A DNA stretch of 59,419 bases, the filler included, from Platydemus manokwari (taxonomy: Eukaryota), in assembly GCA_037951405.1 (NCBI GenBank). It is 5 parts of 5 records of this genome, joined end to end, with 100 filler letters (N's around TTAATTAATTAA, not from the genome) between each part and the next. Parts side by side here need not be neighbours in the genome. Positions count along the whole stretch, not along the records: positions 26,234 to 36,994 come from JBBMOY011107553.1; 4 more parts are not named here. One strand, 5' to 3'. Below, in pieces: positions 26,234 to 36,994 of this stretch. The notes under the pieces were generated by a model that saw only the letters and a list, made by a program, of their open reading frames with translations, ran no database searches and was not told where the DNA came from. The position numbers and the translations under genes were made by a program. The first letter of the stretch is position 1. Every line of letters starts with the position of its first letter.

Positions 26234-29200
26234 GTATTTGTTTAAATACTATATATTTGTACAATCTTTTGAATTAATAAATATTAATATTTACTAATCT
26301 TTATCACACTATCATTTATTATTATTCCTCAATTATATTTATTTAACGCCTTGTGCCGGTTGGAATTTTATTCTTATTTTATTATTGCGTTTTAAATTAT
26401 TATGGCTTATTATATATTTTATAAAATATTAAAAATCTTTGACAACAAAATAAATCAATAATCAATTTTTAATTAAAACAATAACCTGATTGTTAAATAA
26501 TTTAAATAGGATTCATTGTTCCTATTATTATTAAATTAGAGTCTCCTGTGCTTTCGCAGCAACAGCCCTTGTTGAAGTGTAAATTTCTGACGATTGGGCT
26601 TATTTATTTGGGCCAGCAATCAATTTGATCCAGATAAGTTTGCACAGTCAATTTGAAAGTAGTTAATGAAATGGTTGGATTGAGTCCAATCTATTTAAAT
26701 AAAAAAGTAAAATTATATAAATTCATTACAACAAGATTGATTATAAAAGTCATTTGATCAAAATAAAATTACTTGATACAAATACCTGTGACGTTGAACA
26801 ATTATAATTTTGCAAGAAATTTTGAGTTGTATATATATGATTGATTTTTCTGATAATAGGATTTTGTCTTAAAAAAATCCTCGTACAATTGAATAGCTAT
26901 AATAATTCTGGATTGTTTTGATTGAAGTTTCTTGACTGATAGAGTGCAATAATTGGCGCATTGTAAAATCAAATATAATATTGGGCGTGTTATAATATTG
27001 GATGCTCAGCTGCCATTTTTAGGTGCATAAATATTATTCTCTTCTTTCTTTGTTAGATGTTGTTCCTATCTTTGTATTTTATTTAATCTATTTTTGTCAT
27101 TTATAACTTTCCGTTGCTATTTTTGATGTGTTTTTTATCTCGTCATTCTATTTTTCATTCTATATTTCATGAATAGTATTTTTATTTTTTTGTCTATTTT
27201 TATAAAAAAATTTTTTATTATTTATTATTATTTCTATCTATAGTAGACTTCTAAGAGCTAACAATTATTATTTTGGAGATCTGGTTCAGCGATTTGATTT
27301 TAGTAAATTCTGACAAATTTAGCTTGAAGAATTATCATCGTAAAATTTCAAAATCCCATTTAACATTGTGTGCGTCATTGTCAAATGACTTCATAACTCG
27401 AATATTATTTCTGAATAATGTTATATTTAATACTCATAATGGACACGGCCTTGTTAAGTGTTTTATTTGAAGAACTTCAACATTGGATTCAATTTTGATG
27501 TCAAAATTAAACCCTTTGTAACTTCCTATTAGTATTGGTCAGATTCTTTATGGACATTCTGTTTTCCGTGCTATTCGACAAAAAATTTAAATAGTCATTC
27601 TGTCTGTTTAATTTTTTCTTACTACTAATCGTGAGAAAGACGCGTATGTCGCAAGTATATACAAATAAGATATTTAAGAAAATTCTGATGCGTTTCTATT
27701 CTTTCAATGGCTGGTGAATAATTCCAAATGTCGGCATATTTGTGTTTGATTATCTATTAGAGAAATAGTGACTCCAGTAACGACAAGTTAAGCTGGTGTG
27801 TCTAAAGAAGTGTAAATGTCTCTTGTATTTTCTCATCTAACAATGGTCTAGCAAAATTTAATATTCTGATAGAATATGTGAGTTCCATTTCAATTAATAA
27901 GTAGCTCGTAAGATCATTTCTGATCCAACATACATGGTAAGGATAATTGTAAGGATAATCCATCATGAACATGAAAACTATGATTCCAGTATGATAAAGC
28001 TTACGACTATTCTAGTAACAAGGTATATGATCTAAATATAAAAAATATTTTTGTAAGTGATTCCGATTTTTTGAGAGACTCGTATTATCTTCTATCTACC
28101 GGAATCCTTCTATATGTCCTCAACTATAAAAAATATATGGACAAAGGACCTTACAAAGATTTGAAGATAAATGAAAATTTTATGTCAGTAGTAGGATTAG
28201 AACATAAATAGCGCTAAAACTCCCCAACTCAATTGTGAATATATTCTACAACCTGATAAATTTAACAGAAAAATGGAGAGAAGTAATCTTCTGCTTGACA
28301 AGAATTAGATATTTACAATACCTTCGGCAGGAGCTACTATGTGCTGTAAAGTAAGTTAGGAAATACGAATTACTCGATAATGAATATACTTAAAATATAA
28401 TTTCGAAATGTATAAACACAGAAAATCGTTGAGCAATACCATTTCAAAGCTTTTAAAAAGCAATTTAAATAATAGAACAGATAGGATTCCGCAAATTGTT
28501 GCGATTCTAGAATATTATTAAAAAGCGAGTTTGTAATCAAATAATAACATCACTACTACCTGCAGATCACAATGGTATGTTTTAACTATTATGAATACAC
28601 AGCTTAAACAATTTCTCGTAACACTTTTTCGATATCACGGCTATTTAGCTCCATAAATAAGAAGAAGCAGTACGAGTACTCAAAGCTTGAAATTTACTGA
28701 AATATTTAAAAAATATTACAGAGTCCGATCATTAACAACTAGAGTAAGTGACGTGGGAGCCCATTATTCGTAGGTTATCTACTCCTACTCTGTACTTTAT
28801 TTTTATATTTAGATGAAATGTAATATGAATTAAAAAAGTATTTAAGAATGATCGATCGTTTTATTGAAATCTGAGGCTTAGAAGTGTTTGCACGCATTTT
28901 TTCGAATGAAACTAATCGATTACGCAAACTAAATGCTTTCAATACACGCGCAATCCATTGGATTGAAAGATCAGCCAACTCCCATTATAAAACCAATTAG
29001 TGAGATACATATGGCGACGCAACCATGATCATTTTACTAACAGTAGCTATTCAAATGTAAATAAAGCAAAAATTATTTACAAACATTTTATTTACTGAAG
29101 ATGTTTGTCAGAGACAATTTATTTGTTCAAGAAAATCCGAGAGATACTTCAAGCAAATAATAACACACACCCAACAAAACATCGATTAATATGAGATTCA

Positions 29201-30100
29201 ATCAATTAAATCCAAATTACGCAATCCAATATCAATGTTGACACAGTTATTAAAAATCTTTAGAAAAACATTAATCGATTATTTGATCAATTCGTTCAAA
29301 TCTTCAAAACAAACAATTATTCAATCGGTTTGTTTGGAAAACAAATTTGTTTATCTAAAATGTCATTATTTCCGTTCAAGAATAAAGTGAAATATCAAGC
29401 AACAATCTTGAAAAGGGCACACGTCTGTTGAAAATAATCGACAGAAAGAGGCTTCATATTAAAGTCTATTACATCATCAACCGATTCTATCCAAAACGTC
29501 TGTGATAAATATACAATATGTATATAATATCTACTGAAGAACGACCGGATTATGTATCATCATCGTGTAGTCGTCTATGAAACGTAATTGGTAACCTTAA
29601 TATTTATTAATGACAATTCCGTACATTAAACCACGCTTTACAACTGAAATTAGGTGGTACCTTGTGTAGATGTATGAATTTGACTGACCCTTCAGTAAGT
29701 GTGTGCCTACACAAGACAGTACACGTTCCTATCGTGCATGGATATTCAATGCATGTGTGTGTTCAAGAATAGAGAATCCATATGTTGTAGCTCATCATCA
29801 ACTTTATCACCATCACTTCTCAAATGAGATCAAACAAAGAATGCAACATGTATGTGCATCGATACACACATACCATCGTGTACATTTCGTAATGTAGCAC
29901 ACACGTCTCCATCGAGCATGAGTAACACGATACACGACAAATATACACACACAAAACCATTGTACACAATGATTGTGAAAGGTAAATGTATGACAATAGC
30001 CAGATGAATTCATTCCAATCTATCATAGCGATCAGCATCTGCACTAACAAAATCACACAATCAATTGTAAGAAAATCATTATTTTGTTATTTGTGGTATA

Positions 30101-30238
30101 CGCTGCTACACTTGGTCGCTTGCTCTTTTGCTTATCAAAGAAGCAATCATTTTTTCAAGGTTTAATTGTATTACTGTAAAATATTTGCTCCTTGCTGTTT
30201 CGCTAAAACTGGGTCCTAGCTAAATCAAATTGCTTGCT
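30101..30238 (+). promoter_or_regulatory. YGCY-motif cluster (candidate MBNL-binding element) in the presumed 5' UTR of the muscleblind gene
   Basis: Ten TGCT/CGCT motifs in 138 nt, ending 11 nt before the ATG. Confidence 0.65.
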
Positions 30239-30249
30239 TTGTCCATAAA

Positions 30250-33200
30250 ATGATGTAAGTCGATATTTATTGATAAAATTATTTTTATGTTGTATTGATT
30301 GATTTAATATTTTATACGAGAATTGATTGATTTATTGATGTATAAATATAAATGTGCATAATCCGATTTTAGATTTCCAAATTCTCCAGTTAATAGTAAC
30401 ATTAATGCTACACATATCCCGCAATTCTTTAATCCTACTGCTATCTCTTTACCGTTTTGTTATAGTGGAACACAAATCAATTATCGGGATTCCAGTTGGC
30501 TGAAATTGAATGTCTGCGAATTATTTCTGAAAAAAGAATGTCCAAATCTTGACAACTGCTCATTGGCTCATCCTCCAAGCACTGTAAAAATAGAAAACAA
30601 TACCGTAACGGTGTGCTATGATTATATAAAGGTATTTTTTAAATAATTTGCCATCAAGAAAAAACTCGATATTAGTTGAATAAGTGAAATTGATTTTAAA
30701 ATTTCAATTTTTTCTGTGATAGAAGTTCAACGAAAAACAAAATTCAATTCAGATTTTTAAAATCGATTTGTTTCCATTTAGAAAAAAGATTGCAAACATG
30801 GAAACTGTAAATACTATCACCCGCACGATGCTTTAGCTTCTGCCATTTTACGAAGAGGAGACGATTCGAAAAAGAATGGGGTATGGCAATTGTTGGAAAT
30901 TGATGTTTTTCAAACTCTTTATTAACATCTTATATTTTTTATTTTGTTTAGAATGCTTTGAACAATATAGGATTAAATTTAAGCATTCGCAATCCATTAC
31001 AGATTAATCGATCTCATGAATTATTGAATATTCCAAATCCGAATATATTATCTAGTCAAATCAATAATAATTTAATATCAGATTCACAAATCAAATCGAA
31101 ATTAGAAGTAATTATTGTATTGATTTTTCTTTCTTGTCAGTAATATTAATCGATAATTATTTGTTTTTTGTTTAATCGAAGTTATTCATAAATGATTTTT
31201 GAATTTATTGATTTTTTGGTATTCCTTCCAATCGATACGCTTAAAAATTTTTTATTATTGTGCTGTTGCTTATATATATTTTTTATAATAATTTTTAAAA
31301 ATTTATTTGTTTCCTGATTGATTGCATGTTGAAATAACTTAGGTAATGCGTCAGCTAAATGCTGTAAATGCCTCAGCTTGGCTGCCTGGGTTAAATGTTG
31401 CAAACGCTCAGACATTGGCTAACCCCACAAATCAAGCGAATGTGTCCTTGCATACTTTATTACCTGGTGTTTCTGCTAAAAGCTCTATGTTCAACCAACT
31501 CGGTGTAATTGTTTCTATGTCTTGTAGTACAATGAATCCGCCAGTTGGTGGCAACATAGTCGATACAAAAGTATCTAGTAAAAGAGCAGCCACTGAAGCT
31601 TTTGGGCCAAATTCCAGCAGCAATATGATCCATGCTAGCAGTGATAATGTAAATTTCGCCTGCTTCTAACAAAATAGCACCGATTATTGATTATAAAAAG
31701 AAATTCATTTTAAAAATATCATATGTATATCTATATCATAAAAGCTTGTTATGGAAAGATAGAAACAATTAATTACTTATGCTTTATATGCTTGTTATTC
31801 TAATGGAATTATTTTTTTGTTTCGTATTTCTAAACGATTTGTAATATTCTCAATTTTTTTCAAAATTTAATTTTAAAATTGAAGATATTACTTATTATTT
31901 TGTAAGTAGATTTCGTAGATTACCTAACAAAATTGAATAATAAATTATAATTTGTCAGTAATTTGGTATTGATTTTTGTGCCATCGGCAAATTATCTGCT
32001 TGATTACTCAGCTAATCCCTGGTCGAATGTATGTGATTTTTTTAGAATTACCAGAACTTTGAGTGTTATTTTTTCTGTCTTATCCAATGTCTTGCCATAA
32101 ATCTTTTCATTATTTATGATTGCCTACAATTTCTCCCATTAAATCATATTTCTAGGGTTCGATAAAAGATTATTATTGATTGAAATGCCTTGATAGATTG
32201 TATGTCATGACCAGTGATTACATGTGATGTCGGCATTTAATTTTCCTTTCCAAGTATAAAAGCAAATTTAAAATCTCTTAATCTCTTAAAAGGTATTCGG
32301 TGTTATTTACCATGATATTACGAAACCAGGTATGTGATGAAATTCCTTTTAGAGATACGCAGGTATGTCCGATGTAAAAAAGATCAAACAAGATGAAACG
32401 GAACCATCTTTGAAAGAAAAATGTGATATTCCTACTGCTGAACCCGGTGTATCCATCCAATATATGGTGCCTCAAATGATCAATAGCAGTCCTCAATATC
32501 TTCAATCTCCAGCTCAGTTGACAATGTCCGGCTTGACCGGTACAAATATCAATAATGCTTACAACATACTCCATAGTACCCCTATACAGACTCCAACAAT
32601 GTCTCCATATACTCAACTGTCACCATTGAATCTTAACAATCTCATGTTCCAGTCATTGCTGACGAATCCAAATATGTCTACCAATAATCATAATTTGGAG
32701 TCAATTCTCGGATTATCAGCTCAAAAATTATATCCTCTCGCTGGCACATATCCACAAATCAATATGGCACAATTATCTCTTCTTAATCAACTCTACTATC
32801 AACAACTCTATCAGAATTCATTGACCAATCAAACTCAAATGCTTTGTTAGTTTCATTGAATATTTAATCGATATTAAAATGATATGTTTGCAAGTGATAT
32901 GATTTTTAAAGCGTGTGGAATGATGAAATCAAAATATTGATTAATGTCACTATAAATTTCACATTTCATCGATCATTTAAATATTGCTGTTGAAATCTTG
33001 AGGTCGATGTTAATTATCGATTTCTTAAATTTAATTGAATATTTATAAATTTAAATTATTATTCCAATTAATTAGAATTTGCTAAGCAACCTCGTAAATA
33101 ATGAAATATTTTTTAATGAAATATTTTGACTACTTTTACACATGATTTTAGTTATAACAGTTTTGAAACAGCACTGTACCTGTATTATATAAATATTGAT

Positions 33201-34092
33201 GTGTGCATGAGTGCAAAAATTAATCTGTATTTTGTCAACAACAGCAGAGAGAAGCTTTAAGTTATTCAATAAATAATAATCAATCATAATCAAATTAAAC
33301 TCTGATATTTACAATGTTAAGCATGGCATTTATTCAATAAAACTGATGGACCTGGATGGATATTCATAAATATTAAGCTGATTAATTTATTGGTTTTTCT
33401 ATTCAGTCGTCATTGTTTACATTCTATAATATTGATTATTATTTATTGAACGATTAATTTAATATTTAATTGATTATTATTAAGTTATCGATAACTCAAG
33501 TTGATTGTATTGATAATATTATCAATGACAAAATATTTCTTATTAATATTATTATTGTTATTTTAACATTATTTATTATCATTAATCATTATTTTTTTAA
33601 ATATTTTCTTAATGGAGATTGAAAAATTATCATATCTATCGATACATAATAATCGATAATAATAATTATTATTATCATTGCTTGTTGTAGATCCTGGCTC
33701 CATTAATATCGCTGAACTGCAACAACGATCATTTGAAGAAACCAGTGTAGCATTTATTAATGACAAAGGAACTGTAAGCCGATTGAAAATTTGATAATTC
33801 ATGAATGGGTTATCTTTTATAGATTTTAGAGACTTTGCCAGTTTGTAAAGACTTTTTACAGGGAAAATGCAAGCGCAATCAATCGTGTAATTATGTTCAT
33901 CTATTGGATTGTAGGAATATTTTATCCTATAATAATTATTAATAATATTTAAAATTTTTAGCGCATGTTGAAGTGAAAGATAACAAATTGACAGTTTGTA
34001 AGAATGCATTGAAGGGTCAATGTCACCGTCCCGTCTGTAAATTCTATCACATTCCTTCGTATCAACTGCAAAAACTCGGTTTCTCGACTTAG
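30250..34092 (+). CDS. mbnl: Muscleblind-like RNA-binding splicing factor with four CCCH fingers, about 539 aa, 9 exons
   Basis: Exons 30250-30254, 30373-30631, 30782-30880, 30952-31107, 31343-31648, 32353-32845, 33691-33773, 33823-33910, 33962-34092 (1620 nt, open). ZnF1/2: RDSSWLKLNVC..C..C..AHPP..IENNTVTVCYDYIKKKDCKHGNCKYYHP. KRAATE motif. ZnF3/4: LPVCKDFLQGKCKRNQSCNYVH..VCKNALKGQCHRPVCKFYHIP. Confidence 0.9.
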
Positions 34093-36798
34093 AAACCACG
34101 AAAACAACGAGATATGAACTATTGTGACAGAAAATTACCACCGACCAATACTATTATATATCATATCATCAATACTTTTTATATTATCTTTTTTTCTAAA
34201 GGTCAATAATAATTATATATTGTATTCAATGATTTTTGGTTTTAAAATCGATAATTTTCACGGAGTTTATCGATTATTGTGAAGTTTGGACGAAATCATT
34301 ATTATTGTTATTTTTTCTTTTTTGAACACTAGTTTGTTATCTGAGCTTATTTTTTTGTTTTTTGGATCATTAAACACACAAACACATCGATTTTTTGTGA
34401 TGTAAATAAAAGTATGAATATATACATATATATATTTGATATCAAAATTTTATGTCGTTCTCTCATACGGAACGATAATCCTGTACATGTAGTGATTCTT
34501 TGTATATTGAAGATATTTTTTATTTCATTTTCAATTGTGATGATGATGATGGTGAAATGCTGATGTGAAAATTGTAGTTGTGTGTAATCTCAATATTCAC
34601 ATGCAAACATCTATTATTTATATTGTATTGTTGATATTGCGATGATGATCCTCGTACCTTATTAGATCATGTTGACGGATAATTTCCTGTTGTATTACTA
34701 TCAGGTTTATTAGTTAGACAATATTATTTAAATACATTTTCTTTATTATCTTTTCATTTTATTTATCTTTAATTGGTTTAATAGTCGTCATGATTGTTTG
34801 AAGTATTTAATCTTGCCACATAACTCATGTATTGAATGCCATCCTAAAATAACCATTTGGCGAATATTTACAGCGTTATGAAGGATCATATCGATTATGG
34901 TGTGCATTTTAATCATACTGGAGCGAACATCATCATAAAATGTATTTCATTTCCGTATAAAATATATGCCATGAATAATGATGTATTATGTAATATAATC
35001 GATATCCACACATGTCTGCATAGTTTATTTCCTTAAACAACACTTGTCTAATCATGTAAAGACCACTGATTTCTATATTTAATCACTCATTTGCTATTTA
35101 TATAACCCATTGCTATCTTTTAAATCTATAACATCAGATATGGTTTTGATGATATTGATTTTGATTATTTCTTTGATTAATTAGACGAACAATGAATTGA
35201 TTGAAAATAACGTAAATTTCTTGTCAATACTACAACAGTAAGGTCGATAACTCATATTGAGAAAGAAAAACAATATTTATTAAACACTAAAACCAATGAT
35301 TTTAATGAATGATTATTTGAAATGAGGTACCATATCGGTCATCGTTGACTGATAATGTCATAGTCCAATTAATTTTGCTACTTATACGGCATCAGGTGAA
35401 TATGATTATGAAATAAATCGCTTTTATCTCGTGTGATGGTATCATTAGCAGGTGAAGTGGCAAAAATAGAAGAAATTCTGTTGATGTGATTTTCATCAAA
35501 AAAGTATGATTTCAAGAAACGAAATCTGAACATATTTATCATTTGGAATATCGATTTGAATATTAAAATTGATTAGAATTGTTTGTATTAATGATTAATG
35601 TCGAATGAATAATTCTAATCGATCATCGGATTGATTTTATAAATGAATAATAATATTTATATTATTATTGAACATTGACCAATGTTAACGTTGTTGAGGA
35701 TCTGTGCTGGTAACCTTCAAATGAAACAACAGATTGCCACTTTTTGACCGAATTCCATTAGTTGAAAAACCATAAAAATATTCACAAAATTATAGTTTAT
35801 TTAGAAATGTTAACCATGTTACCGTTGTAAAAATTAAAAGGGTTGTCTTTATTCAAACACTGTAGCTGGTTAATTTTTTCATCGGTGATTCAAGCTTAGT
35901 AAATAAGGTATCGACAGAATTAAGAGAGAAGTTAACAACCATAAAGCGATAGTGTTCATCGACATTTGGATTTTGATGAATACGTTGAGAATCACACCCA
36001 AACCACGCATCTCCAAATTTTAAACCCAATCCAAAACTCTGGAAATAATCCATTGTCATTCAAAATTATTCTATCAAACAATCACCCCGAAAAAACAACC
36101 AATTTGATTCCCAAATTTCTCCAATCCAATAATATTCAACCAAATATAAAATTCAACGATCCAATGATGATCCAGTCTGATACAAACTTTTACATTGATT
36201 GAATCTTTTGAATTTTTAAAAGCATTGACTTGCTTCTGTTCGATGTGATGATTTTCGAAATAATAATATTTTATAATTGTCGCTTTGTATGATATTGATT
36301 TTATAAATCTCAGAAATTGTAAATCGGAATAACTAAAGAGGGTGACAGAGACTGCATACTTAAAGTAAATGAGATAATAAAAGTTATAGATTTTGACCAT
36401 AATAATAATATTAATAGAATTATTATAATAATCATTGTTAGTAGCGGCTACTTCACTTGCAATTGATGTTCAACAGAAGAAGTCATTGTTACTATTTTCT
36501 TAATATTTATTTTATTCCAACATTTAATACAATTTTTTTAAACAAATAGGAATTCCTTTTTCAGGGAGATTTCATTTCAATCTTAATCAGGTATAGATAA
36601 AAATATTTAAAGAATTTTCTAATCATTTTGTTTTAAACAATAAATTTTGAAACACTATTTATTATTTTTAAAATTTATTAAAATAACCAATGCACTACGA
36701 GTGATTCATCACTGCCTATATAAGGTAGCAGTCACAATTAACACTGCCACTTTAACACATTTTTGAAGACCCAGTCACATGTTACACTGATTGTTATA

Positions 36799-36994
36799 TA
36801 CGAGGATAAGACATATTATTCTATATTCAAGAACAGTGAGATATCGCCAAACCGCACACGGCCAAAAAGAATAAGGACAAGTTTGAGGAATTGGACGGAG
36901 TCGAGCTTTTGCCGCAACCAGCTTACAGCCCAGATTGTGCACCATCCGATTACAGTCTTTTCCGCTCAATGCAACAATTTCTGAAAGGACGCAG
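36799..36994 (+). mobile_element. Internally deleted mariner (DD34D) element, cut by the contig end
   Basis: TA|CGAGG.. terminus at about 36799, then DIAKPHTAK...LLPQPAYSPDCAPSDYSLFRSMQQFLKGR, matching the mariner YSPDLAPSD motif. Confidence 0.85.

What the first reader, a model, noticed from the sequence alone, without database searches (positions are those of the whole stretch)
30101..30254. Ten MBNL-type YGCY motifs packed in front of the muscleblind gene's own start codon
Seen: CGCT/TGCT at 30101, 30104, 30117, 30121, 30129, 30186, 30193, 30201, 30231 and 30235 in U-rich context. About one would be expected by chance at this base composition (rough estimate). The exon carries only 5 coding nt (ATGAT) before the donor. 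Established: MBNL proteins bind YGCY, vertebrate MBNL1 autoregulates through its start-codon exon, and MBNL/CELF factors control stem-cell splicing in planarians. Inference: an auto- or cross-regulatory feedback switch among mbnl paralogues.
Basis: partly seen in the sequence, partly recalled or inferred. Interest (0 to 1): 0.7.

Follow-up and report, generated by a model that had tools for sequence, protein, structure and literature searches.

The report
MBNL-motif cluster before planarian mbnl-1 start
Ten copies of the short RNA word that muscleblind proteins bind sit just in front of the start codon of a planarian muscleblind gene, which suggests, but does not prove, the self-regulation already known for this gene in vertebrates and flies.

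Summary
Ten YGCY motifs (7 TGCT, 3 CGCT) lie at exactly the stated positions, 30101-30238, against about one expected. No whole-piece shuffle reached ten. The array is strand-specific and is not a tandem repeat. It contains two of the piece's three GCTTGC hexamers, the top in-vitro motif of planarian MBNL-1.

The gene is the orthologue of Schmidtea mediterranea mbnl-1. It has nine coding exons, all with GT..AG introns, collinear with the published transcript-derived protein. That protein begins MIFPN and has its first intron after coding nucleotide 5. The published cDNA primer begins ATGATATTTCCAAAT, which equals window 30250-30254 joined to 30373-30382. So the 5-nt "ATGAT" coding exon is supported.

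The 246 nt before the start codon contain no ATG. This is the second-longest of 421 such gaps, as expected of a leader.

Four things could not be tested: the transcription start, binding, conservation of the cluster, and response to knockdown. No RNA run and no orthologous DNA were reachable.

Most likely (about 0.5) this is an MBNL binding platform giving auto- or cross-feedback, like vertebrate MBNL1 exon 1. If true it is a new member of a known kind. Interest is moderate.

The parts
30101..30132 (+). YGCY sub-cluster A: 5 motifs (CGCT, TGCT, CGCT, TGCT, TGCT), including GCTTGC at 30118-30123
30186..30204 (+). YGCY sub-cluster B: 3 motifs (TGCT, TGCT, CGCT), spaced by 3 and 4 nt
30231..30238 (+). 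YGCY sub-cluster C: 2 abutting TGCT, giving GCTTGC at 30232-30237, 12 nt before the ATG
30007..30249 (+). ATG-free stretch before the start codon, the putative 5' leader. The ATG-to-ATG gap is 246 nt, second longest of 421 on both strands. YGCY density is 41 per kb against 3.4 per kb in the 3.8 kb upstream. The 5' end of the transcript is unknown.
30250..30254 (+). Coding part of the start-codon exon: ATGAT, with A at -3, followed by the donor GTAAGT
   Evidence: Smed-mbnl-1 intron position 2.2 and primer ATGATATTTCCAAAT
30255..30372 (+). Intron 1, 118 nt, GTAAGT...TTTAG, with no YGCY
30373..30631 (+). Exon 2: N-terminal region and first CCCH zinc finger; 83% identical to the S. mediterranea fragment P0001. 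It has an in-frame TAA just upstream and no in-frame ATG, so the start must be spliced on.
30782..30880 (+). Exon 3: second CCCH finger; by eye identical in protein to Smed-mbnl-1
30952..31107 (+). Exon 4: linker, 52 codons
31343..31648 (+). Exon 5, 306 nt: counterpart of the stem-cell-enriched alternative exon SmeEX0003042 of Smed-mbnl-1. The second-richest YGCY window (31260-31413) straddles its 3' splice site.
32353..32845 (+). Exon 6: long linker; relatives are P0159 (75%) and P0160 (S. mediterranea)
33691..33773 (+). Exon 7
33823..33910 (+). Exon 8: third CCCH finger
33962..34092 (+). Exon 9, coding part: fourth CCCH finger, C-terminus ...QKLGFST, stop TAG at 34090-34092

Best explanation
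The ten UGCU/CGCU motifs form a dense, strand-specific array in the ATG-free leader directly 5' of the spliced start-codon exon of the planarian mbnl-1 orthologue. Most likely they are part of the mbnl-1 primary transcript and serve as a multivalent binding platform for MBNL-1 itself and for the single-pair MBNL-like paralogues. When MBNL protein is abundant, binding would lower output of productive mRNA. There are two possible routes. One is to suppress use of the start-codon exon; skipping it would remove the only ATG upstream of zinc fingers 1 and 2. The other, if this is the first exon, is to reduce translation or stability. Shown here: the cluster, its statistics, its strand bias, the gene identity and the exon structure. 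Inferred: that it is transcribed, that MBNL binds it, and the direction and mechanism of feedback.
For: (1) Ten motifs against about one expected; 0 of 1000 whole-piece shuffles reach ten; Poisson P about 7e-8 from the outside density. (2) Strand bias is 10 YGCY to 1 RGCR, which fits an RNA-level element better than an orientation-free one. (3) TTGCT is the most enriched 5-mer, 6 of the piece's 16. Two of the three GCTTGC hexamers on either strand of the piece lie here. GCUUGC is the top RNAcompete motif of planarian MBNL-1 (PMC4978528). (4) The array is not a tandem or dispersed repeat. (5) The gene is the mbnl-1 orthologue and the ATGAT start exon matches the S. mediterranea cDNA. (6) The 246-nt ATG-free gap ending at the start codon ranks 2nd of 421, as expected of a translated leader, and it covers the whole cluster. 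(7) In vertebrate MBNL1, nine conserved YGCY in about 190 nt of the non-coding 5' part of the start-codon exon bind MBNL1 at 3 nM and drive exon skipping by all paralogues (PMC5389549). [quoted passage not shown] (8) In planarians, exonic MBNL-1 motifs mark exons that go up on mbnl knockdown, that is, exons MBNL represses.
Against: No transcript evidence exists for this species. No RNA run holds the locus, and the one holder is genomic DNA. The transcription start is therefore unknown, and some or all motifs, above all sub-cluster A at -149 to -118, could lie upstream of it. No orthologous DNA could be fetched, so conservation is untested. The leader has no more predicted structure than shuffles do (z = -0.04). 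Part of the excess comes from a locally raised GC-step content. The planarian paper reports no autoregulation (0 occurrences of 'autoregul' or 'feedback'). If this is the first exon it cannot be skipped, so the vertebrate mechanism would not carry over directly.
Confidence: 0.5

Rival explanations
1. The array is a DNA-level element of the mbnl-1 promoter, made of clustered sites for a transcription factor that recognises TTGC(T) or GCTTGC. It lies at or upstream of the transcription start and has nothing to do with MBNL binding.
For: It sits 12-149 nt upstream of the ATG, where a core or proximal promoter of a gene with a short leader would be. 29734-30233 is the GC-richest non-coding stretch of the piece. 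No transcript data place the start.
Against: Orientation bias is strong, 10 to 1. The whole cluster lies in an unusually long ATG-free stretch, which points to selection at the level of translation. The motif coincides with the measured RNA specificity of the gene's own product.
Confidence: 0.18
2. The array is transcribed but is read by something other than MBNL. It could be a pyrimidine-rich tract of a cis- or SL-trans-splice acceptor just upstream of the ATG, or a site for another U/C-rich-binding protein that controls translation.
For: Sub-cluster A is a 76% pyrimidine tract ending in AAAG|AAG at 30139-30143. Sub-cluster B precedes CCTAG| at 30218-30220, which would leave a 35-nt exon. A further candidate is CATAG| at 30027-30029. 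From my own knowledge, planarians trans-splice a share of their mRNAs.
Against: All eight introns of this gene end in TAG, six of them in TTTAG, and none of the candidate acceptors looks like that. Pyrimidine tracts do not need GC steps, yet 10 of the 12 GC steps here are YGCY. Even in this reading, intronic YGCY upstream of a start-codon exon would be a classical MBNL repression layout.
Confidence: 0.17
3. The array is a neutral oddity: a decayed low-complexity tract or a chance composition effect with no function.
For: There is only one genome and no conservation data. Local dinucleotide content alone explains about half of the count (mean 5.4).
Against: 0 of 1000 whole-piece shuffles and 30 of 20,000 local shuffles reach ten. 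No tandem or direct repeat structure was found. The position is exactly at the start-codon exon of the gene whose product binds this motif.
Confidence: 0.1

Closest known systems
Vertebrate MBNL1 exon 1 (e1) autoregulatory element (Konieczny et al., Nucleic Acids Res 2017; PMC5389549)
   Same: A dense cluster of YGCY (nine in about 190 nt there, ten in 138 nt here) lies in the non-coding part just 5' of the start codon of a muscleblind gene, on the exon that carries the ATG.
   Different: Vertebrate e1 is a long internal exon (about 875 nt of 5'UTR plus coding sequence) preceded by alternative non-coding first exons, so it can be skipped. Here the coding part is 5 nt, and whether any exon lies upstream is unknown. 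The vertebrate motifs sit in semi-stable hairpins, whereas no structure beyond chance is predicted here. Binding, skipping and conservation are shown there and untested here.
Drosophila circMbl and mammalian circMBNL1 (Ashwal-Fluss et al. 2014, as summarised in PMC9352392)
   Same: A muscleblind gene whose 5' ORF-bearing exon carries multiple binding sites for its own protein and is used for feedback.
   Different: The circRNA route needs an internal exon with MBL sites in both flanking introns. Here intron 1 has no YGCY at all, and an upstream intron is not established.
Smed-mbnl-1 (comp2838_c0_seq1) of Schmidtea mediterranea (Solana et al., eLife 2016; PMC4978528)
   Same: It is the orthologous gene. 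Exon 2 is 83% identical and exon 3 identical in protein. Intron positions are collinear, including the intron after coding nt 5, and it has the same MIFPN start and ...QKLGFST end. Its protein binds GCUUGC in RNAcompete.
   Different: It is a different planarian species. The linker exons differ in length (exon 4: 52 against 54 codons; exon 5: 102 against 111). The paper does not describe the leader or any autoregulation.

Membership tests
Muscleblind/MBNL gene, orthologue of Smed-mbnl-1 | Two tandem pairs of CCCH zinc fingers of muscleblind type | tested here: met
   Exons 2, 3, 8 and 9 hit CCCH finger models (PF22628, PF00642, PF18345). The best named relatives of exon 2 are lamprey MBNL and Sycon MBNL2a.
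Muscleblind/MBNL gene, orthologue of Smed-mbnl-1 | Collinear protein and intron positions with the transcript-derived Smed-mbnl-1 | tested here: met
   Nine coding exons give 1620 nt, i.e. 539 codons plus stop, and all introns are GT..AG. The phases match the published positions 2.2, 89.0, 122.0, then 450.1-, 478.0- and 507.1-type phases. P0001 is 83% identical over exon 2. The comparison with the full published protein was done by eye, exon by exon.
MBNL autoregulatory YGCY cluster on the start-codon exon (vertebrate MBNL1 e1 type) | Significant cluster of YGCY motifs next to the start codon on the sense strand | tested here: met
   Ten in 138 nt, about tenfold over background; 0 of 1000 shuffles reach ten; strand bias 10 to 1.
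MBNL autoregulatory YGCY cluster on the start-codon exon (vertebrate MBNL1 e1 type) | The cluster lies within the transcribed exon | tested here: inconclusive
   No RNA run was available. The only support is indirect: the 246-nt ATG-free gap.
MBNL autoregulatory YGCY cluster on the start-codon exon (vertebrate MBNL1 e1 type) | The exon is internal and can be skipped | tested here: inconclusive
   Candidate acceptors exist at 30027-30029, 30139-30143 and 30218-30220, but none resembles the gene's TTTAG acceptors.
MBNL autoregulatory YGCY cluster on the start-codon exon (vertebrate MBNL1 e1 type) | Direct binding by MBNL protein and response to MBNL dosage | not testable with these tools
   This needs EMSA, CLIP, RNAi or reporter assays.
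MBNL autoregulatory YGCY cluster on the start-codon exon (vertebrate MBNL1 e1 type) | Conservation of the motifs between species | not testable with these tools
   No orthologous DNA was retrievable.
circMbl-type feedback | MBL/MBNL sites in the introns flanking the circularised exon | tested here: not met
   Intron 1 (30255-30372) has no YGCY. Whether an upstream intron exists is unknown.

The most novel reading that the evidence does not exclude
Feedback of muscleblind on the exon that carries its own start codon would be ancestral to bilaterians: present in flatworms as well as flies and vertebrates, despite complete turnover of the sequence. In planarians it would wire mbnl-1 output into the CELF/MBNL switch between stem cells and differentiated cells. 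UGU words, the core of the BRULI motif, are interleaved in the same leader at 30085, 30092, 30167, 30175, 30196 and 30240. The gene's known stem-cell-regulated exon carries the second-richest YGCY window.
Probability: 0.3. Interest if true: 0.65.

Novelty: new member of a known kind. Interest (0 to 1): 0.45.

Why it matters
MBNL dosage is tightly controlled in vertebrates and flies, and that control matters in myotonic dystrophy. In planarians the MBNL/CELF balance sets stem-cell versus differentiated splicing. A feedback element on planarian mbnl-1 would show that self-control through the start-codon exon is an old feature of the family. It would also give a simple, mutable 140-nt element for testing how MBNL levels are buffered during regeneration. 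As it stands, this is a well-founded sequence prediction and not a demonstrated mechanism.

Tried and rejected
- **RNA evidence.** The one holder, X1, is genomic: its contigs span introns and it is identical over 28800-31247.
- **Orthologous DNA.** Two metagenome scans, with exon 2 and with P0001, found nothing. Exact look-ups of P0001, P0160 and the exon-6 ORF are not on record. A word search with the spurious 59-aa ORF that overlies sub-cluster A found nothing.
- **Big protein search.** It found no full-length planarian orthologue, only the S. mediterranea fragment P0001.
- **Repeat origin.** Rejected: no tandem repeats and no direct repeats among the sub-clusters.
- **Structured RNA element.** Rejected for lack of signal: fold z = -0.04, and Rfam gave nothing near the cluster.
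- **Bacterial-type promoter scan.** Uninformative.
- **Alternative start exons.** 46 ATG...GT combinations upstream keep the frame.
- **CELF-type UGU enrichment in the leader.** Not above background: 7 in 175 nt, against 23 per kb in the piece, which is about 4 expected.
- The spliced protein was not joined, searched or folded as one sequence. Exons were searched one by one by reference, and only their lengths were summed.

Full report
**Observation.**
CGCT is at 30101, 30117 and 30201. TGCT is at 30104, 30121, 30129, 30186, 30193, 30231 and 30235.
- They fall into three groups. Group A is 30101-30132 with five motifs. Group B is 30186-30204 with three. Group C is 30231-30238 with two abutting motifs, 12 nt before the ATG.
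- The piece (26234-36994, no N) has 78 YGCY on the + strand, or 7.2 per kb, so about one is expected in this span. It is the richest 154-nt window on either strand; the runner-up has six.
- In 1000 dinucleotide-preserving shuffles of the whole piece, the richest window on either strand reached at most eight.
- When only the 154 nt are shuffled with their own dinucleotides kept, the mean is 5.4, and 30 of 20,000 shuffles reach ten.
- The signal therefore has two parts. GC steps are in local excess: 12 against 3.3 expected. Their context is also strongly biased: 10 of 12 are flanked by pyrimidines on both sides, against 29% elsewhere (P = 1.3e-4).
- The reverse-strand equivalent occurs once.
- TTGCT is the most enriched 5-mer, six of the piece's sixteen.
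- The array is not a tandem repeat and its three groups are not copies of each other.

**The gene.**
- Downstream lie nine coding exons with four CCCH zinc fingers. For exon 2, the best named relatives are lamprey muscleblind-like proteins and a sponge MBNL2a. One 95-aa fragment, P0001, is 83% identical.
- The supplement of Solana et al. 2016 (PMC4978528) prints the transcript-derived protein of Schmidtea mediterranea mbnl-1 (comp2838_c0_seq1) with its intron positions. P0001 and P0160 are pieces of that protein.
- The window's exons follow it exon by exon:
  - exon 2, 30373-30631
  - exon 3, 30782-30880 (identical in protein)
  - exon 4, 30952-31107
  - exon 5, 31343-31648
  - exon 6, 32353-32845
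  - exon 7, 33691-33773
  - exon 8, 33823-33910
  - exon 9, 33962-34092, ending ...QKLGFST and TAG
- All eight introns are GT..AG with TAG acceptors, and the exon lengths add up to 1620 nt, which is 539 codons plus a stop.
- The window therefore holds the mbnl-1 orthologue of a planarian related to, but not identical with, S. mediterranea.
They were searched singly by reference, and the comparison with the published protein was made by eye.

**The start-codon exon.**
- Exon 2 has an in-frame TAA just upstream of its acceptor and no in-frame ATG before the first finger, so the start must be spliced on.
- ATGAT at 30250-30254 is followed by a perfect GTAAGT donor. It has A at -3 and joins exon 2 in frame to give M-I-F-P-N.
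- Of the 46 upstream ATG...GT combinations that keep the frame, it is the nearest and the only one with a full GTAAGT.
- The published S. mediterranea protein begins MIFPNTP and has its first intron at position 2.2. The published cloning primer for the full-length cDNA begins ATGATATTTCCAAAT, which equals window 30250-30254 plus 30373-30382.

**Is the cluster transcribed?**
- This could not be shown. Its single holder is genomic DNA, identical to the window over 28800-31247.
- There is one indirect sign. The ATG-to-ATG gap that ends at the start codon is 246 nt (30004 to 30250), the second longest of 421 such gaps on both strands of this AT-rich piece, and it covers the whole cluster. This is what selection against upstream start codons in a leader would produce.
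- The strand bias also fits an RNA-level element.
- The leader could instead be interrupted. Possible acceptors lie at 30027-30029 (CATAG|), 30139-30143 (AAAG|AAG|) and 30218-30220 (CCTAG|). None looks like the gene's own TTTAG acceptors.
- If one were used, by cis-splicing or by a spliced leader, part of the array would be intronic, just upstream of a small start-codon exon. That would still be a classical layout for repression by MBNL.

**Why MBNL is the best candidate reader.**
- RNAcompete with planarian MBNL-1 gave GCUUGC as the top motif, and its specificity correlates with the human protein's. Two of the three GCTTGC hexamers on either strand of the piece lie in the cluster, at 30118 and 30232.
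- In planarians, exonic MBNL-1 motifs are enriched in exons that rise when mbnl is knocked down, meaning MBNL represses them.
- In mouse and human MBNL1, nine conserved YGCY in about 190 nt at the 5' end of the start-codon exon bind MBNL1 with a Kd of 3 nM, and all paralogues induce skipping of that exon.
- In flies the second exon of mbl carries MBL sites and part of the ORF, and it is circularised as a feedback route.
- The present array has the same motif, a similar number and span, and the same position relative to the ATG. Its anatomy therefore matches the vertebrate exon-1 element.

**Limits.**
- Membership in that class is not established. Exonic location and skippability are inconclusive. 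Binding, dosage response and conservation are untestable here.
- The circRNA layout is not met on the downstream side, because intron 1 has no YGCY.
- No structure beyond chance is predicted (z = -0.04).
- The planarian paper mentions no autoregulation or feedback.
- Orthologous DNA could not be obtained by any route.

**Verdict.**
The gene model is confirmed and sharpened.
- I put about 0.5 on an MBNL feedback platform, about 0.18 on a DNA-level promoter element, about 0.17 on a transcribed element read by something else, and about 0.1 on no function.
- If true, it is a new member of a known kind, and of moderate interest.

Noticed in passing
window 31238-31413 and 31343-31648: Exon 5 (306 nt) is the counterpart of SmeEX0003042, the 333-nt Smed-mbnl-1 exon included at 97% in neoblasts against 50% in differentiated cells. 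The second-richest YGCY window of the piece (31260-31413, six motifs; a further motif at 31238, three of the seven in the intron) straddles its 3' splice site, and the exon has 23 YGCY per kb. Alone this is not significant: six or more occur in 147 of 1000 shuffles. It is a second candidate site of self-regulation.
   Followed up: partly
window 33456-33649 (intron 6): An AT-rich stretch with a word depth of about 11,800 in run X1, against about 15 for the rest of the locus. Many contigs break or rearrange here, so it is a very high-copy repeat or satellite.
   Followed up: no
window 36840-36992, + strand: An open frame that ends at the piece's edge and reads like the C-terminal part of a mariner/DDE_3-type transposase (...LLPQPAYSPDCAPSDYSLFRSMQQFLKGR). 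The Pfam DDE_3 hit is weak, E = 0.033.
   Followed up: partly
window 31248, 31693, 31720: Three single-base alternatives carried by short bubble contigs at about half depth in run X1, probably heterozygous sites. There are none in the YGCY cluster.
   Followed up: no
window 29700-29960: A CA/TG-rich stretch that, with the cluster, makes up the GC-richest non-coding window of the piece. It lies just upstream of the ATG-free leader, and a GTAAGT sits at 29695. It could be promoter sequence or an upstream non-coding exon and donor.
   Followed up: no
P0159 (ENA analysis ERZ27256860, 940-nt contig): A third planarian-like mbnl-1 exon-6 fragment, 75% identical to the window, sits in an assembly filed as a metagenome.
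   Followed up: partly
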